A stretch of 62,514 nt of DNA from Macrostomum lignano (lineage: Eukaryota). A program made the translations under genes and the position numbers. The DNA lies in NCBI GenBank assembly GCA_002269645.1, contig NIVC01001159.1:104197-166710 (forward strand). The letters run 5' to 3'. The notes beneath the pieces are model-generated. The model was given only the letters and a program-made list of their open reading frames with translations. It was not told the origin of the DNA and ran no database searches. Positions 504-60,395 of this stretch are shown one piece after another. The first letter of the stretch is position 1. The number at the start of each line of letters is the position of its first letter.

Positions 504-3500
504 CTAACTCTTCTCAAGGCTACTACTTAGCACGTTGCTGAGTGAATATAATAGTGTCGACGTCTCAGAACCGCTAAAAAATTTCATTGAGCAGCCTCTA
601 AACTTTCCGAGCTCTTTCTGATCGAAGCTAACAAGTCGTGAAAGCTGGTCGACCTTCTGCGGCGTAAGATGAAATAGGCCGTCTTCCATCCGAACTTTCG
701 TTTGCTGCAAGTGGCCGCTTACCACAGTCATGATGGTATTTAGGTCGAGCTCACGAAAGTTTTCCTCGATGAAATCGCAAACAGTCTGCACGTACACCGA
801 ACCCGTGTCGGGGCTTCTAAAGGCGGCTGAGCCTGGAATATTGGCATAGCAAACCAAAACGTCGCCCTTTTCGGGAAGAACTGCAGTGTTGCACACTGGA
901 GCGGGTGCCTCATCCGTTTCTACACGAGAATTGGGCAGAACAACTTGTCGCGATGGCTTCCGCGACAGGCCTGGATGAAGAACACCTTTGGCTTTCCTTC
1001 GAGGCTGCGGCAGACAGACGTCTGTGAAGTGGTGGTGAAGTCTTGGGCCTTTGAAACAATAAGTATGCAGTGTACACTAGACTTTTCTAAATGCGAAAAA
1101 CAAGTTCATTCTACGTGACCTACGCGCACTCGTTACCTTGGCCGTTAATTTAAACTTTCGCTTCAAATGACCCTTCTATTGATTCAATATTATGCATTTC
1201 TATTTGGGAGAATTTTAATATTACAATTTTTGTTTATGTCTTGATAAAAATATAAAAGATGATATTCTTGGCAATACGCTCGTAGTTGGGCTTACCTGGA
1301 ACCTATCAGTCAGATATTGAATGTGGTAGGGCAACCCGTCCCTACCGTAGATGCAGTCTTGGCTGCCGTGCGCCATCATGAAGCAGACAAAGCTGCCGTG
1401 CTTGGCAAGGTCAGGTGATTTCTTTATCTCACTGAGGAAATCATCTATCTCCGCAGCAGTGAGGTTCTCTTTTATCCAGACGATGAAGCGCAGACTCTCG
1501 AATACCTGTTTTACTCGTTCAACATCGCGAACCGAACCTTGACGCTCTTTGTGACTGAATGTGATGTGACTTCCGGAGTCGTACCTGCTGATGTTGATGA
1601 TCAGGCAGTAGCCTTGCGGGTCCGTAACTGGATAGAAATTTCCTTTGAGCCTGGAATGCAGCAGATGCTCAATATCTCGTATACATGTACTTTCTATTGT
1701 ATCAAGGCCAAACAATACAATGTAGTGGCACCTTGAGCGTTGAGGTTGGACTGGTCTGCCACGCACAGCTTCTGTAGGATTTCTAAAAGATTTTCATATT
1801 GACATAGGAATAAATTCAATATAGGCTGGTATATTGAATATTTGTAAGCACTTCCCCAAGACCACGAGAAAAATATCTTTAACTTTGACTCACCGATCGG
1901 GTTCATCATCGCTTGGTTCCTCGCCAGGGGCATGGTCCGTGAAAACGTTTCGTCTGAAATGGCCAAAAAGGGTAAGCAGTTCTCTCAGCTGTGTGCTGTA
2001 GCTGTGTGCTGTAGCTGTGTGTGCTGTAGCTGTGTGTGTGTGTGTGTGTGCTGTAGCTGTGTGTGCTGTAGCTGTGTGCTGTAGCTGTGTGCTGTAGCTG
2101 TGTGCTGTAGCTGTGTGTGCTGTAGCTGTGTGTGCTGTAGCTGTGTGCTGTAGATGTATGCTGTAGCTGTGTGTGCTGTAGCTGTGTGTGCTGTGGCTGT
2201 GTGTGCTGTGGCTGTGTGTGCTGTGGCTGTGTGTGCTGTAGCTGTGTGTGCTGTGGCTGTGTGTGCTGTGGCTATGTGTGCTGAGGCTGTGTACTGAGGG
2301 AACTCACGGCAGTGCCAGAGGCTTGTCGAAGTAAATCTTGCCGTCGTACCTAAAAGGCAGTGCGGTTTCTGAAGTCAGGGAAAGTTGCGTGAGCCGATGC
2401 TCTTTGTTAAAATCTATCTGTTTTATCGATTGTCATTCTGTTGAATTTGTGGTTATCGTGCAGCAGCCGTAAATTACGAGCTTTATACTCAACAGCATTG
2501 AAAAAGTCGCCACTCTGCACCAGTGAACAATTTCTCTTAAACTATTCTGAAATCAAAAAAATACGAGAAAACTGAGGGCTAGCTTTAATTCGTCCTCGCA
2601 CCGTCCGATTCCCCCCACTTCATTCCTCAACCCAAGTATGTGGCGTGGCGTAGCCAAAGTTGCATTACTAGCAAGACTGAGAGACTTCATCTGCACACTC
2701 GAAGGTGGCGACCATAGACGGAATCTTTCAGATGCTGCTGAGTATATATTGTTACTATGGTTTACCATAATACTTGTATGTCTATGGTTGAAGTTGGGAT
2801 GGGGGTGTGGGGGCGAAGCCCCCACATTCTTACCATAGAAAAAAATTTCATTAAGAAATTTCTCGAGTCACGAAGGAAGAGAAGAGAGAAGCTCGCTTAT
2901 TTAGATACATATAATAATCCTTGCAATATGTCCGGGAAAGTGATCGATTAAATCCCGCAAAATAAAATCTATGTCAATAACCTCCCTGAAAGTGAGCTTT
3001 AAATTGGTTTAATGACATTAACTGCCCGCTAATTTGCATTAAAGCAAGTTTGACTCCTGCAAGCGGGCTTAAACGTAGTCTATGGGATTAAAAAGCAAGA
3101 ATAAGTGCCCAGCGGGCACAAAGGTCATGGTACAATGCAAATTAGCGGGCAATTATGTCATTAACTGCCCGCTAATTTTGTCCCACTTTGTCAAGGACAC
3201 AAATGTCTATGTTTATGGCACAATAATAGTAATACCCATGCTTTGCGGGCGTTAATGAGAAATCCTCCTAACGCCGCCCTCTGATTTTCCCATTACGCTC
3301 GTAACGCCCTTCAAGCATGGGTATTAATGTACTATCACTCCTTGTCTTTGAGTTATTTTAATAATTGAATCATTTACTGTTTGTCAATGATAGATCAAAG
3401 TCAGAGAGACATTCTCAGTCGCCATGGAAACTCACCCACGCAGCAGCTCAGCCAGTTCCTTCCTACCCTCCTTTTTGGCAAAATCCAGCGCAGTCCTGCC

Positions 3501-5420
3501 GCGTCCGTCCTCCAGGCTCCAATCCACCCCCGAGTCCAGCAGAACCCGACCGACTGCGGCGGCGGTGGCGGGGGGCGCATGGATGGCTGCCCACGAGAGG
3601 GCCGTGGATTCCCACTGATTCCTGGCATTGGCGGAGGCTCCGGCAGCCAGCAGAGCGGAGGCTGCGGCAGAATTGCCAGCCCTGGCTGCATGGTGCAGAC
3701 AACTGCAAGCCCATATATTCGCACAGGTGGGGTCACCCAGCTGCACCAGCTGCTTCCACAGAGCCTCATCACGGCACGAGCTGTTCCGAGCTGCGTACAT
3801 CAGTGCGGTGAAACCCCAGTTGTCAGGCAGGTCGCAGCGGCCGCGGGTCACCGCTCGCCGTAGCCTCGCCGAGTCGCCCGCTTCGGCCAGCCGCTGCAGT
3901 TCCTTTCGATCCGCCTCCTCCTGCAAAAGCAAGCGGGAAATTTGAGCACAGCTGCTCAGCTGCAGCCGCATCGGCACCGCAGATGCCGCTCACCTGGGCT
4001 GTCAGGCCGGAGATATAGCCATTTTTTCCCACAACCAGCCGCATCTCCCTGCAACAGTAAAAAAGTGAGCGGCAAATTTGCAATTTTCCTAAATCTGACA
4101 ACTGGCCGCCAAAATTAAAATTTATTATTTACCATAGAAGTTTTATGGTAAATTTTAGAAAATATAAACTGGCAATTAGGCGGTTAAGGCCCCTTCGGGG
4201 GACCTGTACCTCCTTGTATGCCCCAGAGTATTTGTGAGACATTTGTGAAAAAGCATCCCCAGATGGCAAGTATATCCCAAAAACAAGCACCCGGATCCCC
4301 GATATAAATGCAACATAGTTTTGAAGCTAAAAATGGAATAAAGAATTTAAATAAACTACATGTAGCTTCTGAGCTTTAAGTCTTGACATCTCAGCAATTC
4401 CCCATGAGCCTTGACATCTCAGCAATTCCATTATGAGCCTTGTCATCTCAGCAATTCCATTATGAGCCTTGACATCTTTGCAATTGGCCTTGACATCTCA
4501 TCAATTCCCCCCAAGGTTCGCTTTTAAATGTGTCACACAGACACTCACTCTTGGTATATATTGGATTCCTAATTATCTAATTAGCTGCTCACAGATGGAC
4601 TTTTCAAAAGAACTGCAGCAGCGAACTGCTCACTCACCGCTCGATGTAGCTGGCCAGCTCTGAGTGGCCGCTGAGCCTCGCCAGGTCCGACGCCGTCCGA
4701 CCCTCGCGATTTTTCAGTCCGAGCAGCCGCGACCTCTTCGAGTTTCCGTGCTGTCTGCACTCATTGAACATTGCCTGCCTGAGCAGGTGCAGCAGGTGCT
4801 TGGCGCATTTCCAGCTTCCAGTCCGCGCCGCCTCCATCAGCGGAGTGGCGCCGTTGTCGTTCCGCAGCCACTTCGCATCGAACGACAGCAGCGTCAGCAG
4901 CCGCAGGTGGTCCCGCCGGGCTGCCAGGTGCGCAGCCGTGTCACCGTTCGCGTCAGCCGCCTTGGAGTTCGCGCCCAGCTTAAATAAGTACAAGATGCAC
5001 TTTTCAGTGTGCACGGGAGTCTCAGGAGCGTCGGCCACCAGCATGAGGACGGTCCGACGAGCTGCATCAGCTCTGGTGACCAGCTGGCGCGTTGCCAGCC
5101 GCCGCACCTGTCCGAAGTCACCTCGGATGGCGTCGTGGGCGAGAGTCTGGAGATCGGCTGGTGAGTCTCCGACGCTTTCCCGGTTGCTGGGGTCCGGCTG
5201 AGTGAGTTTCTGCAACTGCAATTGAGACACCTGGGAGTTACATCAAAGTACTGAAATTTTTTGAGTCAACTTGCACAAGCAACCGGAGTCGCCGACTGTA
5301 GATAATTACTACTACATGTATTCAGTTTCTGTCGCTTCAACTTACCGCAGAGTTAGGGAAGTCGGTAATTATTTCTTCATCTTCTGACGATGAATTCGAA
5401 TCGTCTGAGGAGCTTGACAT
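504..5420 (-). CDS. Ankyrin-repeat (~10 repeats) + caspase (p20/p10) fusion protein, 8 exons, ~735 aa, with one apparent 1-nt frameshift in the intersubunit linker
   Basis: Hand-spliced exons: 5420-5346, 5230-4638, 4048-3994, 3920-3436, 2349-2308, 1953-1894, 1650-1296, 1048-504. All introns are GT..AG and the phases match (0,2,0,2,2,2,0). Ankyrin motifs include GDTAAHLAA, GATPLMEAA, GFTALMYAA and GRTALDFA. Caspase motifs include YCLIINIS, RQGSVRD, FMMAHG (catalytic His), KPKVFFIQACRG (catalytic Cys, 967-965) and the p10 segment DVLVCYANIPGSAAFRSPDTGSVYVQ. The QACRG frame stops at TAG 922-920; p10 is in another frame. Confidence 0.88.
1988..2295. repeat. GT-rich minisatellite (gctgtgtg(tg)ctgta)n in intron 5 of the ANK-caspase gene
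   Basis: Direct tandem repetition of 13-15 bp units. Confidence 0.9.
3011..3326. repeat. Two adjacent inverted-repeat/foldback structures in intron 4 of the ANK-caspase gene (MITE-like)
   Basis: aatgacattaactgcccgctaatttgcatt (~3011-3040) is nearly the reverse complement of ~3133-3161. taatacccatgctt (3230-3243) pairs perfectly with aagcatgggtatta (3313-3326). Confidence 0.7.
4380..4510. repeat. ~29 bp tandem repeat (gccttgacatctcagcaattccattatga) x4-5 in ANK-caspase intron 2
   Basis: Visible tandem units. Confidence 0.8.
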
Positions 5421-7029: not shown

Positions 7030-10000
7030 TCAGGAGGTCATGTGAGGACACAGCCGGGCCACATTGTAGGCATTGAGCAGCTCGGGCTTGAGGAACTTCC
7101 TGGCCCGCCAGTCCAGCTCGCCAACCAGCGCCGAATCACCCCAGCTGTCCTCGAACTCCAGGTAAGCCGCCCAGAAGGCCACCGAGCCGGGGCCGAGTCG
7201 GCCAGCGAGGCGTTCGAACTCGCGACGTACTCGAGCGATTGAGGCGGCGGAGCGGCTCGATGCGGCCTCCAGCTGGCAGTAGCGGCGCAGGGCACGAACT
7301 CCGGCCGTGTCCCTGGTAGGGGTGGCGGGAACGGTGGGAAACTGCTAGACGATATGTATAGAAAACCACTTTTTTAACTAGTGGACTCAAGTCAAGATTC
7401 CTACCGATATGTATCGAAATCATCTTTCAACTTGTTGACTGAGTATAACCAGGACTCCTTCCGATATGTATAGAAAACCGCTTTAAAATCTAATAAACTG
7501 GGTGTAATCAGGACACCTGCCGATATGTATTGAAAACGACTTTATAAACTAAAACTGGGTGTAATCAGGACTCATGCCGATATGTATCGAAAACCGCATT
7601 ATAAACTAATAAACTTGGTGTAGTCAGGACACCTGCCGATATGTATCGAAAACCGCTTTACAAACTAATAAACTGGGTGTAGTCAGGACACCTGCCGATA
7701 TGTATCGAAAACCGCTTTATAAATTAATTAAGGTATGTAACAAAATTAATTTTTTCGAATTTAACAGATATTTTAAATAACTATGACTATACAGATGTAT
7801 CTACCCAGAAGCTAAATAAGCAATTCTAGCAGTCAAATCATAACTGAAACCCACCTGGAAGCCGCCCAGACCTCTCGGGTCGCGTCCAGACCATCGGCAG
7901 CATCCAGCTTGGCCACAACTTCATTGTCAGGATCCGCAGCAGCAGCTCCGGCTGCATCAGCCACGCTCAGCATGGAGGCGTCCTCAACCTCCGCAGGCAG
8001 TGCGGCCAGCCGAGCCCGCAGGTCATCAGCGAACTTGTCAGCAACGGGCGGGCAGGCCTGAGCAGCTGACAGCAGCCCCGTCAGCAGCTGCCGATCCTCT
8101 CCTGTAGACCTAGACGTCGAGTCGCCGAAGGTCTCCAGCAGGGCGGACAGAACCAGCGCGGCGGGCTCGCCGGCAGCCACCGAGTCCTCGTCGATGCCCG
8201 AAGCGGCGGGCAGGTCCTGGCGGCGGTGCAGCAGCCAGGCGGTGAGGCCGCACTCCAGCTTCAGCAGGCCGAACAGCAGGCGGCGGCTGCGCTTGTGCAC
8301 CCGAAGACCGCGCAGTAGGAAGGCCCGCGCCAGCTGGGCGGACTGCAGCACCTCCTTGGCTGGGGCTGACAGCCGGGCATCGGCCTGCGGGGTGGGGGAG
8401 ACCCTTGGCTGGTGTCATTGATGATGAAGCTTACCTCATTAACCTGTGATGCTGCCGATCGAGCCCATAGCTAAACTGTTAAATCCTCAGCCAGTAAAAT
8501 TACAGCCAACAGCCGGTAAAAGCTACAATCACAACCGGTGAAACCTACAATCCTAACTGGTGAAACCTACAATCACAACCGGTGAAACCTACAATCCTAA
8601 CTGGTGAAACCTACAATCCTAACCGGTGAAACCTACAATTCTAACTGGTGAAACCTACAATCCTAACTGGTGAAACCTACAATCCTAACTGGTGAAGCCT
8701 ACAATCACAACCGGTGAAACCTACAATCCTAACTGGTGAAACCTACAATCCTAACTGGTGAAACCTACAATCCTAACTGGTAAAACCTACAATCCTAACC
8801 GGTGAAACCTACAATCCCAACCGGTGAAACCTACAATCCCAACCGGTGAAACCTACAATCCTAACTGGTGAAACCTACAATCCCAACCGGTGAAACCTAC
8901 AATCCCAACCGGTGAAACCTACAATCCCAACCGGTGAAACCTACAATCCTAACCAGTGAAACCTACAATCCCAACCGGTGAAATCTACAATCCTAACTGG
9001 TGAAACCTACAATCCCAACCGGTAAACCTACAGTCCTAACCGGTGAAACCTACAATCCCAACCGGTAAACCTACAATCCTAACCGGTGAAACCTACAATT
9101 CCAACCGGTAAACCTACAATCCTAACCGGTGAAACCTACAATCCTAACCGGTGAAACCTACAATCTTAACCGGTGAAACCTACAATCCTAACCGGTGAAA
9201 CCTACAATTCCAACCGGTAAACCTACAATCCTAACCGGTGAAACCTACAATCCTAACCGGTGAAACCTACAATTCCAACCGGTGAAACCTACAATCTTAA
9301 CCGGTGAAACCTACAATCCTAACCGGTGAAACCTACAATTCCAACCGGTAAACCTACAATCCTAACCGGTGAAACCTACAATCCTAACCGGTGAAACCTA
9401 CAATTCCAACCGGTGAAACCTACAATCTTAACCGGTGAAACCTACAATCCTAACCGGTGAAACCTACAATTCCAACCGGTGAAACCTACAATCCTAACCG
9501 GTGAAACCTACAATCCTAACTGGTGAAACCTACAATCCTAACCGGTGAAACCTACAATTCCAACCGGTGAAACCACCTAATCAACAAAGCAAATGAAACT
9601 CACAGGCACCCCATCAGCGTCAGTCTCCATTCCCAAAGCCTGCTGTTCACTTTTCTCTTCATCTTTCAGCGACTTCTTTCTGCCCTCCTTCTGTCGCAGC
9701 CAGCGAGCCCGCGCCTCCAGCCGGTCGGTCCAGTGCCAGTCTGCAGCGGCCAGCCAGAGGTCCTCGCGGCCCGAGTGCACCTGCAGCATCCGAGCCAGAA
9801 CTTTGCTGGCCATCTGCGGGTGTCCGATCTGCTCGCAGAATCTGGCGTGCGCGAGCCAGCAGTCCAGGCGCTCCTGGAATCTGTAGCAGGCCTGGCGGTG
9901 CAGCCGGTGCAGACGCTGCACTATGGAGGCTTCGATTCGATCCCGCTTGAAATAATAGCTGGCAGCGGCCCGCCTGTGCTTCAGGAGCAGCAGCAGCCCC

Positions 10001-11971
10001 ACCTGGGTTTGGAGTGCGGGTGGAGGACAGTGAGTTGATTAGGGGGTGACTTTAGGGTTGATTAGGGGTGACTTTAGGGTTGATTAGGGGTGACTTTAGG
10101 GTTGATTAGGGGGTGACTTTAGAGTTGATTAGGGGGTGACTTTAGGGTTGATTAGGGGGTGACTTTAGGGTTGATTAGGGGGTGACTTTAGGGTTGATTA
10201 GGGGGTGACTTTAGGGTTGATTAGGGGGTGACTTTAGAGTTGATTAGGGGGTGACTTTAGGGTTGATTAAGGGGTGACTTTAGGGTTGATTAGGGGGTGA
10301 CTTTAGAGTTGATTAGGGGGTGACTTTAGGGTTGATTAGGGGGTGACTTTAGGGTTGATTAGGGGGTGACTTTAGGGTTGATTAGGGGGTGACTTTAGAG
10401 TTGATTAGGGGGTGACTTTAGGGTTGATTAAGGGGTGACTTTAGGGTTGATTAGGGGGTGACTTTAGAGTTGATTAGGGGGTGACTTTAGGGTTGATTAG
10501 GGGGTGACTTTAGGGTTGATTAGGGGGTGACTTTAGGGTTGATTAGGGGGTGACTTTAGAGTTGATTAGGGGGTGACTTTAGGGTTGATTAGGGGGTGAC
10601 TTTAGGGTTGATTAGGGGGTGACTTTAGGGTTGATTAGGGGGTGACTTTAGAGTTGATTAGGGGGTGACTTTAGGGTTGATTAAGGGGTGACTTTAGGGT
10701 TGATTAGGGGGTGACTTTAGAGTTGATTAGGGGGTGACTTTAGGGTTGATTAGGGGGTGACTTTAGGGTTGATTAGGGGGTGACTTTAGGGTTGATTAGG
10801 GGGTGACTTTAGAGTTGATTAGGGGGTGACTTTAGGGTTGATTAGGGGGTGACTTTAGGGTTGATTAGGGGGTGACTTTAGGGTTGATTAGGGGGTGACT
10901 TTAGAGTTGATTAGGGGGTGACTTTAGGGTTGATTAGGGGGTGACTTTAGAGTTGATTAGGGGGTGACTTTAGGGTTGATTAAGGGGTGACTTTAGGGTT
11001 GATTAGGGGGTGACTTTAGAGTTGATTAGGGGGTGACTTTAGGGTTGATTAGGGGGTGACTTTAGGGTTGATTAGGGGGTGACTTTAGAGTTGATTAGGG
11101 GGTGACTTTAGAGTTGATTATGGGGTGACTTTAGGGTTGATTAGGGGGTGACTTTAGGGTTGATTAGGGGGTGACTTTAGAGTTGATTAGGGGGTGACTT
11201 TAGGGTTGATTAGGGGGTGACTTTAGGGTTGATTAGGGGGTGACTTTAGGGTTGATTAGGGGGTGACTTTAGGGTTGATTAGGGGGTGACTTTAGGGTTG
11301 ATTATGGGGTGACTTTAGGGTTGATTAGGGGGTGACTTTAGGGTGGATTAGGGGGTGACTTAAGGTGGATTAAGGGGTGACTTCAGGGTGGATTAGGGGG
11401 TGACTTCTGGGTGGATTAAGGGGTGACTTTGGGGTGGATTAGGGGGTGACTTTGGGGTGAATTAGGGGGTGACTTTGGGGTGGATTAGGGGGTGACTTTG
11501 GGTGGATTAGTGGGTGACTTAGTGGATTAGGGTGTGACTAAAGGGTGGATTAAGGGGTGACTTCAGGGTGGATTAGGGGGTGACTTCTGGGTGGATTAGG
11601 GGTAGCCTTCCCCAAGGCTACAAGCCTTCAGGGTGATTAGGGGGTGACTTCTGAGTAAACTAGTATGTGACTTTAGGGTGGATTAAGGGGGGCTTACTTA
11701 AACGTGGATTAGGTGACTCAAGGGCGGATTAGGATCGCGTTATCAAGATTCACATTCCTAGAAATCAGGGAAATACTGATGCGCCAACCTCGTGCTGAGC
11801 ATAGGCCTGATAATCCCGCAGTCGCTTCTCCCTTTTTTGCAGCCGGTATTCGAACCCGCGCCGCTTTCGCAGCAGCTGAGCAGCTTCATCTGGGTTCAGC
11901 AGGCCGGATATGGTCAGCTGCTGCAGTTCCGGCAGCTGCTGTTCGAGCTGCTCTTCAGCATACTCAGCCAT
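7030..11971 (-). CDS. UTP6: U3 snoRNA-associated protein 6 (HAT-repeat SSU processome component), 4 exons, ~465 aa
   Basis: Exons 11971-11789, 10002-9604, 8384-7855 and 7312-7030 have consistent phases. The N-terminus MAEYAEEQLEQQLPELQQL..FEYRLQKR..DYQAYAQHE and the segments EASIVQRLHRL..LWLAAADW, ARAFLLRGLRVH and FWAAYLEFE..GELDWRARKFL match the UTP6 family pattern as I recall it. Confidence 0.9.
7340..7730. repeat. 59 bp minisatellite, ~6 copies, UTP6 intron 3
   Basis: gccgatatgtatcgaaaaccgc.. recurs with period 59 (e.g. 7635 and 7694). Confidence 0.9.
8520..9575. repeat. 22 bp minisatellite (ccggtgaaacctacaatcctaa)n, ~48 copies, UTP6 intron 2
   Basis: Visible tandem units containing CCTAA. 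Confidence 0.95.
10034..11700. repeat. 23 bp telomere-like minisatellite (gttgattagggggtgactttagg)n, ~70 copies, UTP6 intron 1
   Basis: Each unit contains TTAGGG twice. The array is homogeneous to ~11340 and degenerate beyond. Confidence 0.95.
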
Positions 11972-14496: not shown

Positions 14497-15903
14497 ATGG
14501 CTTCAACTACTACTAATTCAACGGCTGCGGACGCGACAGCCGACGCCGCAGGCCCTGACAATTCAGCAATGAGACCGACCTACGACGAGATGATTCAGGC
14601 GGTGACTGACGAGGTGCGACGGCGCTTGGAGCAGACCAGCCTGGGCCAGCCGCAGCACCACCACCACGTGTATCAGCAGCCCCAGCAGCAGGATCGAGCT
14701 CCAGCGCCAAAACCAGTTAAGATTCAGCAGTATACTCAAAACCAGGAATTCGACGTCTGGATCCAGGCTCTCGAGGAGCGTTGTGAGCTCAACGGGATCA
14801 CAGACGATAGACGAAAGAAGGCAGAGGTCCTTGTGAATTTGGACATCGCCACAACCTATCCCGCAGTTGTCAGGATGGAGTTGCCAGACAACCTAACGTT
14901 TGGCGAGTTTAAACAGCGCTTGTCCAAACGTTTTACGCATGTGGCTGACACGCTGGAGTACCGGGAGCAATTCCGATGCTGCTAGCAAGGCAAGACTGAG
15001 AGCGTAGATGACTACGGCGATCGATTAATTGCTCTGGCCAACAAAGCGTTCCTGCACTTTACTCCGGTGCAAAAGCAAGCTGAGCTGGTGGACCAGTTCA
15101 CGGTTGGAGTGCGAATCGCCCAGTCGGCCTGAGAACAGTTAATCCTGGTGAGACCGCAGAATCTGACTGCTGCGAGAAGGGCCGTGCTACGCCTGGAGAC
15201 AGCGGCTAGCCTGGCTCAGCGAGTAGCACCGCCGCCAGCAGCGAGACATGTACGGGTTCTTGAGGATGACGACAGTCAGACGCCCACTGCAGTGCAACAC
15301 GACGCCAAGTCATCTCGGCCCAAGGAGAACTGGTTGCGGGAAGTGATGGAACAACAAACGGAAACTCTGCAAGAGCAGCGACAAATTCTGGAAACATTAA
15401 GCAACGAAATGCGAGAGTTCTACTCGCGGGGATCGCGCGACAACGACACCCCGGAGCCATGGGAACCAGCTTGCCATTAGCCGCGGGACTCGTGGGGCCA
15501 ACGCTCCAGATGTTTGGTACCTCCGACTCCTCGCCGCAGCGCCGACGGAAGCGCCCAATTTACGACACCCGGCACACGCCATGTGTAGCATCAACTGTTC
15601 CATCGACTTCAGCAACCACGAGACGGCAGCAACCCGCCACCAAGGACACCACCAGCAGGAGGTCAACGTCAACAACATCAGCAGCCACAGCAGTCGCAGC
15701 AGCAGACAAGTTCGCGCCTGCCGCCCTATCAGCTGCGGCGGCAGAGCGCCATGTGCTACAGGTGCAATTGTGAGCATCGCGGCGAAGAGTGCCCGCATCG
15801 ATGGTCGGCCAGCACCGTGCCCCAGCGAAACGGCAGCTCGGGAAACGGGACGGCTGGACGTGCCATCGGGGGCAGCGCCATCCAGCAGCCGAGCCAGCAC
15901 TAA
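14497..15903 (+). pseudogene. gag: gag, single frame with in-frame stops
   Basis: One frame from ATG 14497 to TAA 15903, interrupted by stops at 14983, 15130, 15478 and 15586. Retrotransposon gag-like segment (FDVWIQALEERC, ESVDDYGDRL) and a zinc knuckle CYRCNCEHRGEEC near 15754. Confidence 0.8.
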
Positions 15904-18900
15904 AGTCCCCGCCGAGGACTTTAGTCGCTCAGCAGGCCACTGCTGAGACCGCCTCTACACCTGTACAGAACTCTGCACCCAAGCGACCTTGAAGGGATCC
16001 ATATCTGACTGGTAAGATTCAGGGCCGCTATTTTGCTTTTCTACTTGACACCGGCTCAAAGTGCGAAGTCTTAGGATTCAGCACCTGGCACCGTCTATGT
16101 ACTGATGACCCAACCCTGCCAAATCGAGCCCTGCCAACAACGCATCGTGACCTACAATGGCGAACCAATCCAGATGGCAGGCCAACTAACTATGAAAGTT
16201 AAAATCGGAAGTTTTGAGCCGACAGTTAAGTTTCTGCTAGCAAAGGGATCACACGACAACATCCTAGGCTTCGAGTTTCTAGAGAAGTACAGCACCTCAC
16301 TAGATCTCGCTGCCGGGATGCTGTTCTTCAAGGACGGCACTGCCGCACCGCTTTGCTACACGCGAACTGAAGCTACCCCATGCAGAATTTATACAGCCGA
16401 GAGCACTACTGTGCCACCATTATCTTCAGCCCGAATCAAAATCAAATTAGCAAAAGGACGCGAAGAAAACCAAGGGACACCAGCTATGATCGAGCCGCTG
16501 AAACTGGCTCGGCGCAAAGACGATGTGCAGCATCTGGACGCCGCACCTGCCCTGATATCAATGGCGAATGGAGAAGGCGCAATTGAGATGATCAATCAAG
16601 GCACTACGGCCATCAAAGTGCGAGCGAACGCCCTAGTCGGGATTGCGAGACCAATCAGACTGCCCGAGTTTCATTTCTTTCCACTGCCGAAGCCAGAAGA
16701 CTCTGTAAACCAAATCCAAGATGAAGATCCTGATGCTTGGATCAAGGAGATCGACATCGGCAAGGATTTGACCAGTGACCAGCGCGCTCAAGTCATTGAG
16801 CTGCTAATGAAGTACAAGAACATCTTTTCCCAGGGGCCACACAATCTCGGCCGAACTCACCTGGTCACCCATAACATCGTACTAAAGGACAAGGATCCGG
16901 TACACCTGCCGACGCAAAGGATTCCGCCACATCTGTTACTGAAGGTGGATCAGCTGCTAGACGATCTTCTTGCCAAAGGTGTGATCAGACCAAGCTTTTC
17001 CAGCTACAACACCCCGCTGGTGATCATCCCGAAGAAGGACGGCAGCCTGAGGATTGTACAAGACTTTCGGAGTTTGAATCAGAAATGTGAGTACTTTCTA
17101 TACCCGATTCCTAATATTCAAGAAGCATTTGCCAGCCTTGAAGGAAGCCAGCTGTTTAGTACATTCGATTTAAATAGCGGCTACTATCAGATTCCTCTGC
17201 GTCCAGAAGATCAAGATCTGACTGCATTCGCTACGCTGCACCGCGGACAATTCGCCTATAATGTTATTCCTATGGGACTCAGCTCAGCTCCAGCCAGCTT
17301 CATGAGACTTATGAATGCTGTGCTCAACGGGATAGCCTACAAAAGTGCAATTGCCTATTTAGATGATGTCATTGTCTACTCCAAGAAGTTCAACGACTCT
17401 TCAACATATGGAAGAAGTTTTCAAACGAGTGCAAGACGCCAACTTAAAGTTCAAAGGCAAGAAGTGCCATTTATTTTGGGAAAGTCTAAATTATTTGGGA
17501 CACCTAGTAACTAAGGACGGCATCAAGACCGATCCGGCGAAAATTGAAGCAATCCAAACCTGGCCAAGACCAAGAACAGCCCGGCAACTTAAAAGCTTTG
17601 TCTGCACGTGCGCTTATTATGCTAAATTTGTACCCGGCTACGCAGAACTTGCAGCTCCGCTCCATGATTTGATCAAAGAAAAGAAAATTCGGAATTTCAA
17701 TTGTCTATGGGGAAAAGCCCAGCAAGACGCGTTCAACCAGCTCAAGGCAGCTATGACTTCGACATCAGTGCTCGCGTATCCGCAGTTCAGCGAGGATTCT
17801 GAAGTAATGTTTATCTTGAACACGGATGCTTCTGCGACCAGGATCGGAGCCTGCCTGAGCCAACGCCAAGCTGATGGAATCGAGCGCCCAATTTCTCCCG
17901 GCGACTCAAGCCAGCCAAAGCCCACTATCCGATTACGAAGCAGGAACTATTGGCAGTCGTAGACGGAATGCGACACTTCCGCTTCTACCTGCTAGCCAAA
18001 AAGTTCATCTGCGGAACCGACCATGCCGCACTAACCTGGATCCTGAGACAAACTCAACAGGTTGGAATTTTTGGAAGATGGCTACAACACCTAAGCGAAT
18101 TCGAGTTCGAGATCCAGCACCAAAAGTCGAGTCAGCATCAGAATGCCGATGGCCTCTCGAGACGGCCTGAGGACGACGCTGAATGCATGGAGGAGGCTCA
18201 GCCCGAGGCAGCTGCAGTCGAGGACCAAAGTAAGCAGCCAGCCGCGATAACTGGCGCAGCGGCGCCAAAGGTCCACGACAGCAGCCACCCTAGTCCTCCA
18301 CCGAGCAAGAAGCGACCGACCCGCCGTCACCGACGAAAGCCGCCGACGAAATCAACTGAGTCCAACGGCGAGACTACGCCGCCCGCAACACCGACAGCTG
18401 AAAGCAAGCCGCTGACAGAGCTGCATCCGCCGGCGACGAAGTCGAGGCCATCTGCCAGTCGTTACCGGGACTCACAGAGGTCGCCCACCAGCTTTAGCAG
18501 TTTGACATGTTGCCCCATTAGGAGCCACCGACTACTAGCTGAAGGTGACGAGGACAGCGACCACAGTGCAGCCAGAGATGACCACTGCCAACCCGCTCGC
18601 TGCCCTAAGTTCAAGAAGGTAAGATTCAGCAGCAACGCCGACAGCTCCGCTGACTCATCATTATCTGCTGACGATTCAAATTCCAACGACAGTGACGCCG
18701 AAGCCACCGACACGGATCGGCCTTTAAAGACAGCAATGGCCCGGTCACCGGTCCAAGTAGCGACCATGCGTAGGGAGCTCCTGACCCCGAACCATGCCGC
18801 CACAGCCGATGCCGCGCCAGCAAATCCTACAGACAGACGCCGTACTCTGAATCTAACAGATCACATCCCGAGGCCAGTCACTCGCGAGGAGCTCCAGACC

Positions 18901-20412
18901 CATCAGCGTGCTGACTCCGCCATTGCCATGGTGATCAATCTATTGGAAACCCGACAACCAAAACCGCCGATGAACCAATGTCTGAACATGACGAGAAATG
19001 AACGGAACCTGTTAGCATTTTACGAACAATTAGAAGTCCAAGACGATGGACTATTAGTTATACATCTCGACGATGTCGGAGAAGAGGACGAAGCGCGAAT
19101 CATCCTGCCGAAGAGTCTTGATGCCACCGTGTTCGCTGACCTGCATGGTTCGCCCTACTGCGGACACATGGGCCGAGACCTTACCATCGCTAAGGTGCGC
19201 GAGCGTTTCTGGCGACCTGCCCTGGCCAAGGCAGTGTCCGACTATGTCGCTTCCTGCCAGACCTGCACTTTAAGCAAAGGACGGCGGAGAATTCCGGCGC
19301 ATGTACAGTCATTCCCGGTCTGCAAAATCTATAGGTGATGCGCTATTGACATCTTGGGCCCCACTGGAGATCCGACAGATCGAGGCAATAAGTACATCCT
19401 CACCTACGTCGACACGACGTCGAAGTACCCATTCGCTTTCGCCATGAAGAACCAGCGCGCTAAGACAATAATCACGCTCCTGCAAGAGCAAGTCTTTCCA
19501 ATCACCGGAATTCCCGCTTGGATTCACTCGGATCAAGGCAAGCAATTTACAGGGCATGAGTTCCGACACTTCTGCGAAGTCTACGGTATCAGGCAGACAA
19601 CGACGCCACCATACTGGCCCTGGGCAAACGGACAAGCCGAATTGTGCAATAAGAATATTAAGAAAGTGCTCACCTGTCTCCTTGAAGACCACCAACAGTG
19701 GGACAAAATGTTGCCAGCTGCTTTGACTGCACTAAGATCCGCCGTCAATCGTACCACCGGGTTCTTGCTGCACTATGTAGTCTACGGAGTGCCTTATCGA
19801 TACCCTATCGACAACACCCTAGACCGCCTAGACGTATCAGCTGACCTCCCAGAGTACATCGCTAAACATCAGCACAGACTGGCCGAGACTGAGCGCATTG
19901 TTCGCCAGCGACTGAGAGCAGAGATCCAACGCCAAGAAGAGTTGTACTATGAAAACCGGCCGAAGCCAGTAGAACTGCAGCCCGGAGATTTGGTCTGCCT
20001 GGCCAACCCGAAGCTCGAGTTGGGAGAGCTGCCAAAATTCCACTGGCCGTATAAGATCGTTAAGAAAGTCGGCAAAGTCGCTTATTGGATTAAACCTGCC
20101 ACAGCACGATGAGGACGCCCAGCCGAAGTACTTGTACACTGGAACAATATTATCAAAGTGCCGCAATCAATGGCTGAACGACCACAGGAGCCGCCGCAAC
20201 CAACTGAGCGGCCGATGTTGCCCTGCAAGTCGAGCGAGAAAAGCGAAACGGATTCAATTAATCAGTCCGCACTAGAGCCGCAGGCCGCAGCTCAGCCTGA
20301 TCTTCAAGGCAGCCAATTATTCGAACCTAGCCTGCGCCATCCTGAAGTGCTAGAAGAAGACGACCCGGACCTGCCAGACATTGGAATGGAGGTTGAAATT
20401 CAAGGTAATTAA
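15840..20412 (+). pseudogene. pol: pol (protease, RT, RNase H, integrase) with frameshifts and stops
   Basis: Protease LLDTGS (~16045); RT DLNSGYYQ, PMGL and YLDD; RH TDAS, TDH and NADGLSR; integrase zinc finger H..GH..CQTC and core IDILGP/SDQG/NGQAE. Frameshifts near 16110, 17390 and 17900; stops at 15990, 19336 and 20110. Confidence 0.92.
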
Positions 20413-28994: not shown

Positions 28995-31900
28995 TCACTT
29001 TCTGGCCAGGCTGCCAGCTAAGCGAGCCACAATTGCGGCATCTCTGTACGCAATAACGCCCTGCATGTTGCACCACGCGTTAGAGCCTGACGCCTTGGCC
29101 TCCGGCTTGTGGTAGGTCACCTGCAGCTCAGACAGGTCGCCAGTCAGCTGGGGGGCAGCCAGCGCCGGGGCCTGCTTCACAACACCACCGCCCATAGCTC
29201 GGAGCACGGCGTGCGGCGCGCACGTGTCCCACCTGTAGGTGTTGTCCTTGGACAGCACGTAGGCTGAGCACAGGCCGTCGATGACACACAGAAGTTTGTA
29301 GCCGGCTCCCGGCGCCGTTCGAATATCGAAGCTCTCGCACAGGTAGGTGCCCAACTTCTTGCAGTCCGACATCGAAGTGAGAACTGTTGGCTTAGAAGCG
29401 TTGGCTGCGGCCGCAGTCGAGTTGTCGCCGTCGGCATTTGGAGCGGCGCCAGGCGTTTGCCAGATGCGCAGGTCGCCAAGGCACGCGCCCCAGACCATCC
29501 GGCCTGTCCAGCTGAAATGCAATTTATTTTATTGATAGCAGATGTACCAATAGCAGGCCTGTGAATAAATGTTCAGTCTACTTCTAGATCGGCAGCTTTA
29601 AAACCGATTCGTTTATTATTGACTGACTTCACTTTGAAAAAACCCCTTTTTTCTATGGAAGCCTAATTAACCGATTCAGTTTTCATCATCCATTAAGACA
29701 GCGGTTTTCATCGTGAAGGCAATAAAACTGCGTGCAGTTACTTCGAGAAGTTCTCGATGGCGACGATGGCCCGTTTGATGATGTTGTGCGCAATCTCGAC
29801 TCGGCAATGGAACAGAGTCGAGGAGGCTGGTTTTCTTTACTCTCTGAGCATACCTAGCTTGCCGTGTATTTAGCCCCGAAGCAAGTATACCTCAGCGGTT
29901 ATTATTGAATTTTTCGCTGTGCCTCCTGCCCCGAAAAATCGCATGCTTTCTGCCCTTGCAAGCAGCGAAAAAAGGTAGGTGAAGGATAAGGTGAGGTAGC
30001 GGCCGCCTTCGCTAACAAACCCTGACAAAATCTAATCAATCTTTCGCGCAGCCCTGTCCCTGCATGGTCACTCCCGACACGTCGGATGCTTTCAAAGAAT
30101 GAAAAATTACCTCGGATCCTAATGCCTTTGAAGAGCTTGAAAAATGGGCATTGGCAATTCGCATCCTGCAGCTTTGAAACTAATTTTCCTGCTTGTAGCA
30201 TCTTCTAGCACTGGGTTAGAAATCTTTGATTCTGTCAAACACACTTAACTAACCATCAAAGCAGACTGTTGGATGGCTAGTTAGCCAGATGATCTATTCA
30301 GATAGGCAGTACTTCAATGCCTGATGCTCCTGGCATCTCAGAAAATCACTCGCTTTGGTGCATAAAGGCTATTATATGGCGTGTATCGGAGAGCTGATAA
30401 AGCGGCTTCGATGGTAAAAAAATTAAAACCCGACCAATAGTCCGTATTTTAGTGTCTGGCTCCAGCTGGATAGTACTACATCAACTTTGCATACACACCA
30501 GTCAGCAGATAATAGTCAACTTTTAGTTGGCATGGCTGAGCTAAAAGTTAATGACCAAGCGCGTACAGAAGACGCCAGCTACATGTACATGTACTCACGC
30601 CTTGCCGTCCATTGTCCGGAAGAACGGCTGGTTGATGACGCCCATGATCGGCAGGCCGGTGGCTTTGTCGAACACGCCGATAAGCACGGTGACATTCGGT
30701 AGGCCGTTCTGACTGACCGTCTCCCCCGGCCGGAACTCGGGGTCCCTGCCACCGGAGATGTACTCGGCCGTGCCGTCTGGAAGAGAATTTTTAAAGAATA
30801 TTGAGTCAAAACCGTACAGTAATCTGACGTCGATACGTCCGATAAGTCAACGGACGTTGTAGGAAGTCAGAATATTTGTATAAAAAAATCGTACAAAGCT
30901 GCTCGTCAGATCCGGCCTCAACTCACCAATGGGATCAATCCATAGGCCGATGGACTTTTTGTCCAGCTGCACCGAGTCCAGCTGATCAGCTTGTGCCGGC
31001 CTTGGCACCGTTACCTCCTCGTGAACGAGCCCGGTAAGAACAGTGGCTGCTCGATCATTGCCATCCAAGATTTTAGCTGGAAAAAATCATTAATAATTTT
31101 TATTCCAGGTGTTCAAATTGCATATGGTTACAGTGACGTTATAAAGTCATGGAGCTATGCGCTTATAATGATAAAATTTTTGAAGGGCTGAAGGGCTATG
31201 ACGACTGCCTTTTGGCAACATCGTCATAGGACCACTTTTGAGTCAATTCTGCCGATTCTGCTAGCTCCTGGGCATCATACAAGTGGGTAGACGATCACAT
31301 AGGGTGCACGGCAGCCCTGAATTTCCAATAGTTAGACATGTACACTGTCTGTGCCTTGGGGGTTAACCCTGATGGGTTTGAATCGAACGGCAACCCCTCG
31401 GCCAAAGGAATGTGACTTTGCACGGAATCAAACCTGGTGTCGTGGAGCGAGAGTCAGATCGTGTTTACCGCTAAGCTTCTTTGTTCCCTGGCTATCCATG
31501 TATGCTTTTTTATGCACCTCTGGCTGAACCGCTTGTTTCCGCGTTTCTTAATTACCGGATGTTTACTCTGTCGCCGAGGATAGCTTAAGATATAGAGCTC
31601 CAGTTATCTGCAAAATTCTGCTTCAGACCAGCAATGGTTTCTTACTGAGCACGGAGTGAGTCTTCTTGCGATTCTCCTTGATCTCCACGGTGACCGTGTC
31701 ACCCACAGTGTTGGTGAATTTGTTGTTCTCTTCGCCCAGAACCCGCTTGCCGAGGCCGGGAAACTGCCGAAATTGTTTTACGGGAGCAAAATTCATTCGG
31801 GCGAAGTCTTGGCAGTTGCGTTTTTTAAGCAAGCCAGCGCCATAAAACCCTTTGTGACGTAAATAAGCAGTGTTGAATGTATTCGATCCTGATAAACTTA

Positions 31901-60100: not shown

Positions 60101-60395
60101 TGGCGAGAGGTAGAGTGGGAGTGGAGAGGGTAGAGTGGGACTGGCGAGAGGTAAAGTGGGAGTGGAGAGGAGTAGAGTGGGACTGGCGAGAGGTGAGTGG
60201 GACTGGCGAGAGGTAGAGTGGGACTGGCGAGAGGGAGAGTGGAGATATAGGAGAAATAAAGTAGGAAAAAGGAAATAGTGAAGACTACAAAGTCCCAAAA
60301 GTCTGAAATGTTAGCAGTGAGGAGTGAGTAAAGGATTTCTCCGCTCACCTCACCGACATCCAGCAGAGTACAGGAATCAGCCACTTGCTCAACAT
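53695..60395 (-). CDS. Cys-loop ligand-gated chloride channel, GABA-A alpha/GRD-like subunit, 9 exons
   Basis: Exons 60395-60349, 60004-59760, 57435-57365, 57033-56804, 56271-56189, 56102-55908, 55629-55477, 54855-54662 and 54108-53695 are all phase-consistent. Features: signal peptide, [15 protein letters not shown], Cys-loop [37 protein letters not shown] and M4 [10 protein letters not shown]. The 83 and 153 nt exons are typical of GABA-A genes. Confidence 0.93.
55105..55365. repeat. 16 bp minisatellite (ccaatccacaagcaca)n, intronic
   Basis: Tandem units. Confidence 0.9.
57085..57268. repeat. (CTGT)n microsatellite, intronic
   Basis: Direct reading. Confidence 0.95.
58640..59625. repeat. 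~1 kb polypyrimidine minisatellite (22-33 bp units, ctctccctgtcttctccttgccctctccc)
   Basis: Tandem units, almost entirely C/T on the plus strand. Confidence 0.95.
60008..60242. repeat. Purine-rich ~21 bp minisatellite (gagaggtagagtgggactggc), intron 1 of the channel gene
   Basis: Tandem units. Confidence 0.9.

What the first reader, a model, noticed from the sequence alone, without database searches (positions are those of the whole stretch)
504..5420. Caspase with an ankyrin-repeat prodomain (about 10 ANK repeats fused to p20/p10)
Seen in sequence: the ORF track shows two ankyrin ORFs and two caspase ORFs as separate items, but seven GT-AG introns with matching phases and three small bridging exons (55, 42 and 60 nt) join them into one ~735 aa protein. 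The caspase has intact catalytic and S1 residues: AHG, QACRG, the RQG Arg and the AAFR Arg. Its linker contains VETD, the same tetrapeptide as the human caspase-8 autoprocessing site. Established: canonical initiator caspases use CARD or DED death-fold prodomains. Inference: this is a non-canonical initiator caspase recruited or activated through ankyrin-mediated binding, possibly a lineage-specific death or immune sensor. I cannot say whether such fusions have been catalogued elsewhere.
Basis: partly seen in the sequence, partly recalled or inferred. Interest (0 to 1): 0.82.

Follow-up and report, generated by a model that had tools for sequence, protein, structure and literature searches.

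The report
Flatworm ankyrin-caspase gene, frameshifted copy
This is a real spliced flatworm (Macrostomum) gene that fuses about ten ankyrin repeats to a caspase protease, an architecture already described in flatworms, but this copy has a reading-frame break between the two protease halves and belongs to an undescribed Macrostomum-only lineage whose ankyrin module is also attached to protein kinases.

Summary
The eight-exon minus-strand gene is real. All seven introns are GT-AG with matching phases. The 55, 42 and 60 nt exons are conserved in Macrostomum lignano proteins, one from an RNA-seq-based annotation. An AlphaFold model shows one continuous ~10-repeat ankyrin solenoid, a disordered linker and a caspase-3/7/8-like domain.

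Two corrections apply. The last exon most likely starts at 1021, not 1048. QACRG and VETD/p10 lie in different frames, with the break at 'AA' 946-945. As assembled, the product is a 588-aa ANK-p20 protein ending at TAG 922-920. No plausible intron or slippery site rescues it, so it is either a young pseudogene or null allele, or a 1-nt assembly error.

The architecture is not new. 'ANK caspases' were reported in Schistosoma (2014) and named as a platyhelminth clade (Genome Biol Evol 2024). That paper calls them parasite-restricted and lists none for M. lignano.

In my tree the window gene falls in a separate, 100%-supported Macrostomum-only family, sister to the M. lignano kinase-prodomain caspase. 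The true parasite-clade ortholog in M. lignano is PAA88208. The window's ankyrin module is shared at 80-92% identity with MAP3K-like kinases. Interest is modest.

The parts
5346..5420 (-). Exon 1 (75 nt): ATG 5420-5418 and a Ser/Asp/Glu-rich N-terminus, MSSSSDDSNSSSEDEEIITDFPNSA. Phase 0 donor GTAAGT.
   Evidence: P0001 has a similar N-terminus, MSSSS...SESEKITMFSDRA. Disordered in AF2.
4638..5230 (-). Exon 2 (593 nt): ankyrin block 1 (about 5 helix-pair repeats). The phase-2 donor G|GTGAGT gives TGA 4636-4634 if the intron is retained.
   Evidence: 94% nt identity to the M. lignano L001 paralog, 88-92% aa identity to the ANK-kinase proteins P0004/P0005/P0009, 83% to P0007. dS is only 0.078.
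3994..4048 (-). Exon 3 (55 nt): (R)EMRLVVGKNGYISGLTAQ, a conserved β-hairpin and helix end that bridges the two ankyrin blocks.
   Evidence: R226 and G237 are invariant; E224, M225, L227, I235 and L238 are conserved in at least 90% of sequences. High pLDDT with strands at residues about 228-236.
3436..3920 (-). Exon 4 (485 nt): ankyrin block 2 (about 5 helix-pair repeats). Phase-2 donor, TGA 3434-3432 on read-through.
2308..2349 (-). Exon 5 (42 nt cassette): (G)YDGKIYFDKPLALP. It is shared with the ANK-kinase paralogs. Read-through of its donor (cc|gtga) gives Pro-stop, which matches how the ANK-only M. lignano models end.
   Evidence: P0004 ...LLRGYDGKIYFYEPLALP then kinase; P0003/P0014 end ...FDEPxxxP. 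P0081/P0082 skip it.
1990..2292 (.). Intron-5 minisatellite, 15-nt unit x 21 (TGTGTGCTGTAGCTG).
   Evidence: Its translation, AHTATAHTATA, forms the false N-terminus of the 'caspase-only' UniProt model P0079.
1894..1953 (-). Exon 6 (60 nt cassette): (P)RNVFTDHAPGEEPSDDEPD(R), an acidic disordered linker.
   Evidence: pLDDT 31-49.
1296..1650 (-). Exon 7 (355 nt): N-terminal part of the caspase p20, with FYPVTDPQGYCLIINI, ERQGS (S1 Arg) and MMAHG (catalytic His).
504..1021 (-). It is 518 nt, so not in one frame.
945..946 (-). Frameshift site: 'AA' between GAC (Asp, 949-947) and GTT (944-942), where paralogs have a full codon (D-R-V) or two (D-R-A-V-V). Net -1 relative to an intact ORF.
   Evidence: (net +17 nt vs L001, which is -1 mod 3).
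920..922 (-). Premature in-frame TAG, 13 codons after the end of QACRG. The product as assembled is a 588-aa ANK-p20 without p10.
912..923 (-). VETD in the p10 frame: the candidate autoprocessing Asp in the intersubunit linker.
   Evidence: P1 Asp is conserved in the Cys-intact paralogs and is Arg in the Cys->Gly paralogs P0001/P0023.
507..593 (-). C-terminal tail of about 29 aa that is not conserved (CSMKFF...LEKS). It arises because the paralog's TGA stop is TCA here.
   Evidence: Disordered in AF2.

Best explanation
The locus is one spliced gene of a macrostomid flatworm (Macrostomum or a close relative). It encodes a long-prodomain caspase with four parts:
- an N-terminal solenoid of about 10 ankyrin repeats, built from two exon-encoded blocks joined by a micro-exon hairpin;
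- a disordered acidic linker of about 35 residues, encoded by two skippable micro-exons;
- a caspase-3/7/8-like protease domain with the His/Cys dyad and both S1 arginines;
- a linker Asp.

It belongs to a Macrostomum-specific multigene family. That family is distinct from the published neodermatan 'ANK caspase' clade and is sister to the M. lignano kinase-prodomain caspase. The same ANK module, through the 42-nt exon, is joined at a phase-2 intron to MAP3K-like kinase domains in other paralogs. The first ANK exon appears to be kept similar by gene conversion.

This particular copy carries a net -1 frameshift at 946-945, between the catalytic Cys and p10, plus a stop-loss tail. As assembled it cannot make an active protease. 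I lean slightly towards a very young pseudogene or null allele (about 55%) over a 1-nt assembly error (about 40%).

Inferred mechanism for intact family members (not shown here):
1. The ANK solenoid binds a partner or ligand.
2. Clustering brings the caspase domains together.
3. They dimerise and self-cleave at the linker Asp.
4. The active enzyme then cleaves substrates.
Kinase paralogs with the same ANK module would respond to the same input.
For: Gene structure:
- GT-AG introns with matching phases.
- Micro-exons conserved in homologs.
- Locus colinear with M. lignano NIVC01003438.1, including introns and UTRs.
- That locus's fused model P0001 comes from an RNA-seq genome-guided annotation.
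- P0081/P0082 join the ANK exon directly to the caspase exon.
- There is no in-frame Met between ANK block 2 and the His motif (sequence).

Domains:
- Pfam Ank plus Peptidase_C14, 143.8 bits once the frame is joined.
- Best solved matches are caspase-7 and caspase-3, E about 4e-29.
- AF2 pLDDT 77.8, and Foldseek TMt about 0.8 to caspases.

Family placement:
- NJ tree: window family 100%, plus Casp.PK 85%, while neodermatan Casp.Ank plus PAA88208 is 96%.
- The window ANK region gives no BLAST hit to Casp.Ank prodomains.
- The ANK module is 80-92% identical to that of ANK-kinases.
- dS is 0.078 in ANK exon 2 against 0.56 in p10.
- Every protein examined that carries the family-type ANK module is from M. 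lignano.

Frameshift. Stop-loss.

Linker Asp: conserved in Cys-intact paralogs and lost together with Cys in P0001/P0023.
Against: - No transcript or read data exist for this species, so splicing and the frameshift are unverified at this locus.
- The p10 frame stays open for 181 codons with conserved motifs, and dN/dS is 0.43. That fits an assembly error as well as a very recent lesion.
- The tree is neighbour-joining on 35 sequences, and the deeper node joining the two ANK-caspase groups has only 27% support. A single origin of ANK caspases followed by prodomain replacement is not excluded.
- No binding partner, activity or expression is known for any ANK caspase.
- The ANK prodomain could instead be autoinhibitory or substrate-targeting.
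Confidence: 0.72

Rival explanations
1. The gene is intact and functional in the animal. The missing base at 946-945 is an assembly or consensus error, and the true product is a 727-aa active ANK caspase.
For: - The p10 frame is open for 181 codons, where chance would give about 0.2%, and keeps conserved motifs (GDVLVCYANIPGSAAFR, GSVYVQT).
- dN/dS is 0.43 for p10 and 0.14 for the p20 end.
- There is only one disabling lesion, and it lies at an AA dinucleotide that may be a shortened A-run.
- The catalytic Cys is intact here, whereas the nearest paralog has Gly.
Against: - The run is only 2 nt long, so it is not a typical long-homopolymer error site.
- A stop-loss tail is also present.
- The family already contains a catalytically dead lineage (P0001/P0023), so decay does occur.
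- No read data are available.
Confidence: 0.4
2. The ankyrin part and the caspase part are separate genes or alternative transcripts, for example a polycistronic unit resolved by SL trans-splicing or intron-retention isoforms. On this view the fusion is a gene-model artefact.
For: - M. lignano databases contain ANK-only models (P0003, P0011, P0014) and caspase-only models (P0079-P0081, P0084).
- About 7% of M. lignano transcripts are polycistronic precursors.
- Four donors give an immediate TGA on read-through.
Against: - The caspase-only models P0079 and P0080 do not start with Met. P0079 begins inside the translated intron-5 minisatellite, so they are truncated predictions.
- The ANK-only models end exactly at the exon-5 donor read-through. 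They could be isoforms, but they do not make the caspase half independent.
- The caspase half has no in-frame Met before MMAHG.
- The acceptors of exons 6 and 7 are phase 2, so an SL-donated AUG would be out of frame. This last point rests on my own recollection that the SL ends in AUG.
- At least 10 independent fused models exist, including RNA-seq-based ones.
Confidence: 0.07
3. It is simply an ortholog or member of the already published platyhelminth ANK-caspase clade (Casp.Ank), whose prodomain has diverged beyond recognition.
For: - The architecture is the same.
- The paper places the M. lignano kinase-prodomain caspase, the window family's sister here, next to the Casp.Ank clade.
- My tree joins the two groups, although at only 27%.
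Against: - M. lignano has a separate protein, PAA88208, that groups with neodermatan Casp.Ank at 96% and has its own ANK region.
- The window ANK region shows no similarity at E<1e-3 to those prodomains.
- The window family groups with Casp.PK at 85%.
Confidence: 0.15

Closest known systems
Platyhelminth 'ANK caspases' (Casp.Ank): first noted in Schistosoma (Lee et al. 2014, as cited in PMC11463336) and named in 'Evolution of Apoptotic Signaling Pathways Within Lophotrochozoans', Genome Biol Evol 2024. Examples: S. mansoni XP_018647858.1, E. multilocularis CDS36952.1.
   Same: An N-terminal ankyrin-repeat prodomain, a long low-complexity linker, and a C-terminal p20/p10 caspase with QACRG. Proposed to be initiators recruited through ANK-mediated protein binding. 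No function has been tested.
   Different: - The caspase domain falls in a different clade. Casp.Ank groups with M. lignano PAA88208 (96%), while the window family groups with Casp.PK (85%).
- The ANK prodomains show no specific similarity.
- The host is a free-living macrostomid, whereas the paper calls ANK caspases parasite-restricted and lists M. lignano as N/A.
- This is a multi-copy family rather than a single gene per genome.
M. lignano kinase-prodomain caspase (Casp.PK, PAA54824.1/PAA75167).
   Same: It is the closest caspase domain outside the family (85% bootstrap sister). It is Macrostomum-specific and has a long non-death-fold prodomain. Its kinase domain resembles the kinases fused to the window-type ANK module (30% identity, 120 bits).
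   Different: The prodomain is two kinase-like domains plus a Gln-rich linker, not ankyrin repeats.
M. lignano ANK-kinase paralogs (e.g. P0004 = BOX15_Mlig015152g1, P0005, P0007).
   Same: The N-terminal half is nearly identical (80-92% aa) through the 42-nt exon, with the same exon structure.
   Different: The C-terminal effector is one or two STE/MAP3K-like kinase domains (best solved match ASK1/MAP3K5) rather than a caspase.
Human caspase-7/-3 and caspase-8/-9 (Peptidase C14A).
   Same: The fold (Foldseek TMt about 0.8), His/Cys dyad, QACRG, S1 Arg179/Arg341 equivalents, an intersubunit-linker Asp, and a C-terminal motif resembling the caspase-3 C-terminus (my reading, from memory of caspase-3).
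   Different: About 28-30% identity. There is no CARD or DED. The prodomain is a ~360-residue ANK solenoid.
Molluscan STAND/NLR-like caspase-ANK proteins (Haliotis rufescens XP_048241358.1; Batillaria attramentaria KAK7463151.1).
   Same: A caspase domain and ankyrin repeats occur in one polypeptide, and the ANK array is the plausible sensor.
   Different: They contain an nSTAND3 NTPase (and ZU5 in the Batillaria protein) and more than 20 ANK repeats. The domain order differs, and they are 1900-2000 aa long.

Membership tests
Caspases (MEROPS C14A / Pfam PF00656) | Peptidase_C14 domain above the Pfam gathering score. | tested here: met
   99.3 bits for the in-frame p20 part, 33.2 bits for p10, and 143.8 bits when joined. 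The cutoff is 21.4.
Caspases (MEROPS C14A / Pfam PF00656) | Catalytic His (xHG) and Cys (QACxG), plus the S1 arginines (Arg179/Arg341 equivalents). | tested here: met
   MMAHG, QACRG, ERQGS and AAFR are all present. However, AAFR lies in a different reading frame from the others.
Caspases (MEROPS C14A / Pfam PF00656) | p20 and p10 encoded in one continuous ORF. | tested here: not met
   There is a net -1 frameshift at 946-945 and TAG at 922-920. No credible rescuing intron or slippery heptamer was found.
Caspases (MEROPS C14A / Pfam PF00656) | Caspase α/β fold. | tested here: met
Published platyhelminth ANK-caspase clade (Casp.Ank) | Ankyrin-repeat prodomain N-terminal to the caspase domain. 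| tested here: met
Published platyhelminth ANK-caspase clade (Casp.Ank) | The caspase domain falls inside the monophyletic Casp.Ank clade. | tested here: not met
   In the NJ bootstrap tree, Casp.Ank plus PAA88208 has 96% support and excludes the window family. The window family plus Casp.PK has 85%. The union of the two groups has 27%.
Published platyhelminth ANK-caspase clade (Casp.Ank) | Prodomain homologous to the Casp.Ank prodomain. | tested here: not met
   BLASTP of the window ANK region against S. haematobium, E. multilocularis, H. diminuta and PAA88208 gives no hit at E<1e-3. No profile-level test was done.
Published platyhelminth ANK-caspase clade (Casp.Ank) | Restricted to parasitic platyhelminths, as stated in the paper. 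| tested here: not met
   All close relatives are from free-living Macrostomum.
Initiator (apical) caspases | Long prodomain that mediates recruitment. | tested here: met
   The prodomain plus linker is about 445 residues. A recruitment function was not tested.
Initiator (apical) caspases | Death-fold (CARD or DED) prodomain. | tested here: not met
   Pfam finds only Ank families in the N-terminal half.
Initiator (apical) caspases | Monomeric zymogen activated by induced proximity, acting upstream of executioners. | not testable with these tools
   This needs biochemistry.
Pseudogene (unprocessed) | A disabling lesion in the coding sequence. | tested here: met
   A frameshift and a premature stop, plus a stop-loss tail.
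Pseudogene (unprocessed) | Relaxed constraint or absence of expression. | tested here: inconclusive
   dN/dS is 0.43 for p10 and 0.14 for the p20 end against a paralog, and the downstream frame is still open. No expression data are available.
STAND/NLR-type caspase-ANK receptors | A central STAND NTPase domain. | tested here: not met
   There is no NTPase hit in the window protein, in contrast to the Haliotis and Batillaria proteins.

The most novel reading that the evidence does not exclude
Macrostomum flatworms lack FADD and DED caspases. They may have evolved their own combinatorial death and stress signalling toolkit. In it, one ankyrin 'input' module is exon-shuffled at a phase-2 intron onto alternative effectors: a caspase, MAP3K-like kinases and possibly others. 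Gene conversion keeps the module homogeneous, so a single upstream ligand or adaptor triggers proteolytic and kinase outputs in parallel. This would be a lineage-specific analogue of death-fold or NLR sensor-effector networks, arising independently of the parasite ANK caspases.
Probability: 0.2. Interest if true: 0.65.

Novelty: new variant of a known kind. Interest (0 to 1): 0.36.

Why it matters
The headline claim, a caspase with an ankyrin prodomain, is already in the literature, so it is not a discovery in itself. Three things remain useful:

1. ANK-prodomain caspases are not confined to parasitic flatworms, as currently published. A free-living macrostomid carries them. M. lignano has both an ortholog of the parasite clade (PAA88208) and a second, expanded lineage, which weakens the proposed link between ANK caspases and parasitism.
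2. The second lineage shares its ANK module with MAP3K-like kinases. That is a clear case of effector swapping at a phase-compatible intron, and it suggests a testable shared-input signalling system in a transgenic, RNAi-tractable model (M. lignano).
3. For annotation: this copy is frameshifted, and several database 'caspase-only' models in the family are truncated artefacts.

Tried and rejected
- **Cryptic intron.** I enumerated all GT/GC-AG pairs that would restore the frame after QACRG. Every GT-AG option either deletes essential p10 elements or, in the one case that keeps p10 (925->867, 59 nt, donor GTGTAG), removes VETDEAPAPV..., which is conserved as coding in P0019, P0079 and P0082. The GC-AG options are 32-77 nt with poor signals. 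Rejected.
- **Programmed -1 frameshift.** There is no X XXY YYZ heptamer between QACRG and the TAG (by inspection). Rejected.
- **Separate caspase gene.** The caspase-only models are truncated predictions; P0079 starts in the translated minisatellite. Rejected.
- **Tandem family array in the window.** tblastn with 10 family proteins finds only this one copy.
- **Synteny with the M. lignano P0001 locus.** Similarity ends about 200 nt beyond the gene, so orthology or allelism cannot be claimed.
- **Species identification.** No M. lignano protein matches either the caspase gene or the INPP1-like exon at 95% or more. I could not name the species.
- **Full-length profile search for other ANK+C14 fusions.** The list was swamped by giant ankyrin proteins, so only a few informative hits could be extracted. 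It is not a census.
- **First tree attempt.** It timed out and was redone with numpy distances.
- **Supplement of the published GBE version.** It is not held, so I used the bioRxiv supplement.

Full report
**1. What is in the sequence**

Region 504-5420 holds a minus-strand, intron-containing gene. The exons are:
- 5420-5346
- 5230-4638
- 4048-3994 (55 nt)
- 3920-3436
- 2349-2308 (42 nt)
- 1953-1894 (60 nt)
- 1650-1296
- a last exon ending at the TAG stop 506-504

Every donor is GT (GTAAGT or GTGAGx) and every acceptor is AG behind a pyrimidine tract. The phases match (0, 2, 0, 2, 2, 2, 0). Pfam finds Ank/Ank_2 repeats in the N-terminal half and Peptidase_C14 in the C-terminal half. The best solved-structure matches are caspase-7 and caspase-3, at E about 4e-29.

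**2. Two errors in the observation**

(a) The model sums to 2210 nt, which is not a multiple of three. In the last exon, QACRG (973-959) is read in frame 0, which ends at TAG 922-920 (…QACRGSHRDKLFCPILV*). VETD (923-912), AAFR and all of p10 are read in frame +2.
- tblastn with M. lignano homologs switches frame at about 947-941.
- Against the in-frame M. lignano paralog, the linker indels sum to +17 nt, which is -1 mod 3.
- Close paralogs read …CRGSRRD-R-VDAAKSREQTD… (P0079) or …CRGSRLD-RA-VVAPNSREETD… (P0082), where the window has GAC-AA-GTT-GTT. This places the lesion at 'AA' 946-945.
- No credible cryptic intron restores the frame, and I see no slippery heptamer.
- As assembled, the gene encodes a 588-aa ANK-p20 protein without p10. 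With one base restored it encodes 727 aa.

(b) The acceptor at 1048 inserts AQDFTTTSQ, which is absent from all homologs. The acceptor at 1021 (…cacttcacag|ACG) gives RFQ|TSVCRSLEGKPK, exactly as in P0001.

In addition, the paralog's TGA stop is TCA here, which adds a non-conserved tail of about 29 residues.

**3. Is the fusion real?**

Yes, on five lines of evidence.
- The nearest relatives are all from the free-living flatworm Macrostomum lignano, and about ten clusters carry Ank plus Peptidase_C14.
- The 55-nt exon peptide is highly conserved: R226 and G237 are invariant, and E224, M225 and L227 are conserved in at least 90% of sequences. The 42- and 60-nt exon peptides are also recognisable in P0001 and P0002.
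- The locus is colinear with M. lignano NIVC01003438.1 (P0001) through exons, introns and UTRs, at 74-94% nt identity. That annotation derives from a genome-guided RNA-seq assembly.
- P0081 and P0082 join ANK exon 4 directly to caspase exon 7, so exons 5 and 6 are cassette exons between three phase-2 introns.
- The apparent 'caspase-only' models P0079 and P0080 lack an initiator Met, and P0079 begins with AHTATAHTATA, the translated intron-5 minisatellite. The ANK-only models P0003 and P0014 end exactly where read-through of the exon-5 donor gives Pro-stop. The caspase half has no in-frame Met before MMAHG.

**4. Structure**

The AF2 model of the repaired protein has pLDDT 77.8.
- The 55-nt exon forms a β-hairpin between the two blocks.
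- Residues 411-445 (exons 5-6), the intersubunit linker 578-607 and the C-terminal tail are disordered.
- Foldseek matches the N-terminal half to two-block DARPin fusions and the C-terminal half to caspase-7/3/9/8, at TMt about 0.8.

**5. Comparison with what is known**

The architecture is already described. PMC11463336 (Genome Biol Evol 2024) names 'ANK caspases' as a maximally supported clade that is sister to the DED caspases. It says they were first seen in Schistosoma (Lee et al. 2014) and calls them restricted to parasitic platyhelminths, with one convergent case in an annelid. No functional work exists.

I took reference sequences from the preprint's supplement and built a bootstrapped NJ tree of 35 caspase domains.
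- The neodermatan ANK caspases group at 96% with M. lignano PAA88208. That protein is in the authors' own set, and Pfam confirms it as Ank plus C14.
- The window gene falls in a 100%-supported Macrostomum-only family (P0001, P0015, P0018, P0026, P0028, P0079, P0080, P0083, P0084).
- That family is sister, at 85%, to the kinase-prodomain caspase PAA54824.
- The two groups join at only 27%.
- The window's ANK region shows no BLAST similarity to the Casp.Ank prodomains.

The window gene therefore shares the architecture but is not a member of the published clade. ANK caspases are also evidently not parasite-restricted.

**6. Family context**

The window's ANK module recurs at 80-92% identity in many M. 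lignano proteins whose C-terminal part is one or two protein kinase domains. The shared part includes the 55-nt and 42-nt exons.
- These kinases are STE/MAP3K-like. The best solved match is ASK1/MAP3K5 at about 100 bits.
- They resemble the kinase of PAA54824 at 30% identity and 120 bits.
- The divergence point is the phase-2 intron after the 42-nt exon, which is consistent with exon shuffling.
- Synonymous divergence from the P0001 gene is 0.078 in ANK exon 2 but 0.56 in p10. This indicates recent gene conversion or exchange of the ANK exon.
- In an exhaustive profile search, every protein I examined with the family-type module is from M. lignano.
- Outside flatworms, the only ANK+C14 proteins recovered were molluscan STAND-type proteins with an nSTAND3 NTPase.

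**7. Catalytic state and the linker**

Most paralogs keep [LM]M[AT]HG and QACRG. P0001 and P0023 have QAGRG. The linker P1 Asp is present in the Cys-intact paralogs (REQTD, REETD, RETID; VETD here). It is Arg in the two Cys->Gly proteins. This is consistent with autoprocessing at that Asp. The exact VETD match to human caspase-8 is not conserved among paralogs and is best treated as coincidence.

**8. Source organism**

An INPP1-like exon elsewhere in the window has M. lignano as its best hit. Identity is 69% overall and about 90% in the conserved core. No M. lignano protein matches either gene at 95% or more. The window is therefore from a macrostomid, probably a Macrostomum congener or an unannotated, divergent region. 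I cannot name the species.

**9. Mechanism**

*Shown:*
- one gene;
- an ANK solenoid, a flexible linker and a caspase domain with a full catalytic inventory;
- a frame break in this copy;
- a family with swapped effectors.

*Inferred:* in intact members the ANK solenoid binds a partner. Clustering then drives dimerisation and self-cleavage at the linker Asp. Kinase paralogs share the same input.

*Unresolved:* whether this copy is a young pseudogene or null allele (my slight preference, given the additional stop-loss and the dead paralog lineage) or carries a 1-nt assembly error. The 181-codon open p10 frame and dN/dS of 0.43 would fit either.

**10. Verdict**

The residual novelty is a second, Macrostomum-specific ANK-caspase lineage with a kinase-shared module in a free-living flatworm, which contradicts the published 'parasite-restricted' distribution. 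Interest is modest (0.36).

Noticed in passing
M. lignano PAA88208 (from bioRxiv 10.1101/2023.12.11.571055, supplementary file 1, part 40): The published lophotrochozoan caspase survey lists M. lignano as having no ANK caspase. Its own sequence set nevertheless contains PAA88208, which is Pfam Ank + Peptidase_C14 and groups at 96% bootstrap with the neodermatan ANK caspases. The 'parasite-restricted' statement therefore looks wrong.
   Followed up: yes
window 4638-5230 compared with 597-896 (vs L001): Synonymous divergence from the M. lignano paralog is very uneven: dS 0.078 in ANK exon 2 against 0.56 in p10. This suggests gene conversion or exon exchange of the ANK exon among ANK-caspase and ANK-kinase paralogs.
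   Followed up: partly
window 14497-20112 (+): A Ty3/gypsy-type LTR retroelement. It has a gag-like ORF (14497-14985) and pol split over at least four overlapping or adjacent ORFs (16105-17514, 17363-17962, 17950-19338, 19354-20112). The pol frame is therefore broken in several places. P0019 (a chimeric M. lignano model) matches 17399-17779 at 28%.
   Followed up: no
window 8513-9574 and 10034-11602: Two long satellite arrays: a 22-nt unit x 48 and a 23-nt unit x 68. The second is extremely G-rich on the + strand (GC skew +0.64). They flank ORFs at 7833-8351 and 9577-10002 (-).
   Followed up: no
window 58647-59630, 60006-60242, 61870-62410: Further tandem arrays with 31/62-nt CT-rich, 21/42-nt and 21-nt units. 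They generate long spurious ORFs in several frames.
   Followed up: no
window 2771-3013 (intron 4) vs L001 13103-13369: An element of about 240 nt inside intron 4 is 94-98% identical, in inverted orientation, to a segment in the corresponding region of the M. lignano paralog. It is probably a shared mobile element, perhaps a MITE.
   Followed up: no
window 28998-31014 (-): A spliced inositol-polyphosphate 1-phosphatase-like gene (Pfam PF00459 in its homologs). The best hit is M. lignano, at only 69% overall identity. I used it as a species check.
   Followed up: partly
window 46858-47373 and 48107-48514 (-): Two ORFs with repeated '...Y..DF.PH/W...' motifs (FVPHPLERRK..., DFKPWEL..., VDFVPHPLDRPK...). 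They look like exons of a repeat protein of the axonemal-microtubule-stabiliser type. Not searched.
   Followed up: no
Haliotis rufescens XP_048241358.1 (P0142); Batillaria attramentaria KAK7463151.1 (P0170): These are molluscan proteins that combine a caspase domain, an nSTAND3 NTPase and more than 20 ankyrin repeats, with ZU5 in the Batillaria protein. They are NLR-like receptors with a built-in caspase effector.
   Followed up: partly
M. lignano P0244/P0280/P0281, P0009: The same family-type ANK module also appears in models named 'SH3 domain-containing' by UniProt, and in one model (P0009) with a Pfam ANF_receptor match. These may be further effector swaps or chimeric gene models.
   Followed up: no
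M. lignano P0001/P0023 vs window 965-967: The closest full-length paralog has QAGRG (GGT, where the window has TGT) and has also lost the linker Asp (REESR/REETR). It appears to be a catalytically dead 'pseudo-caspase' lineage within the family.
   Followed up: partly
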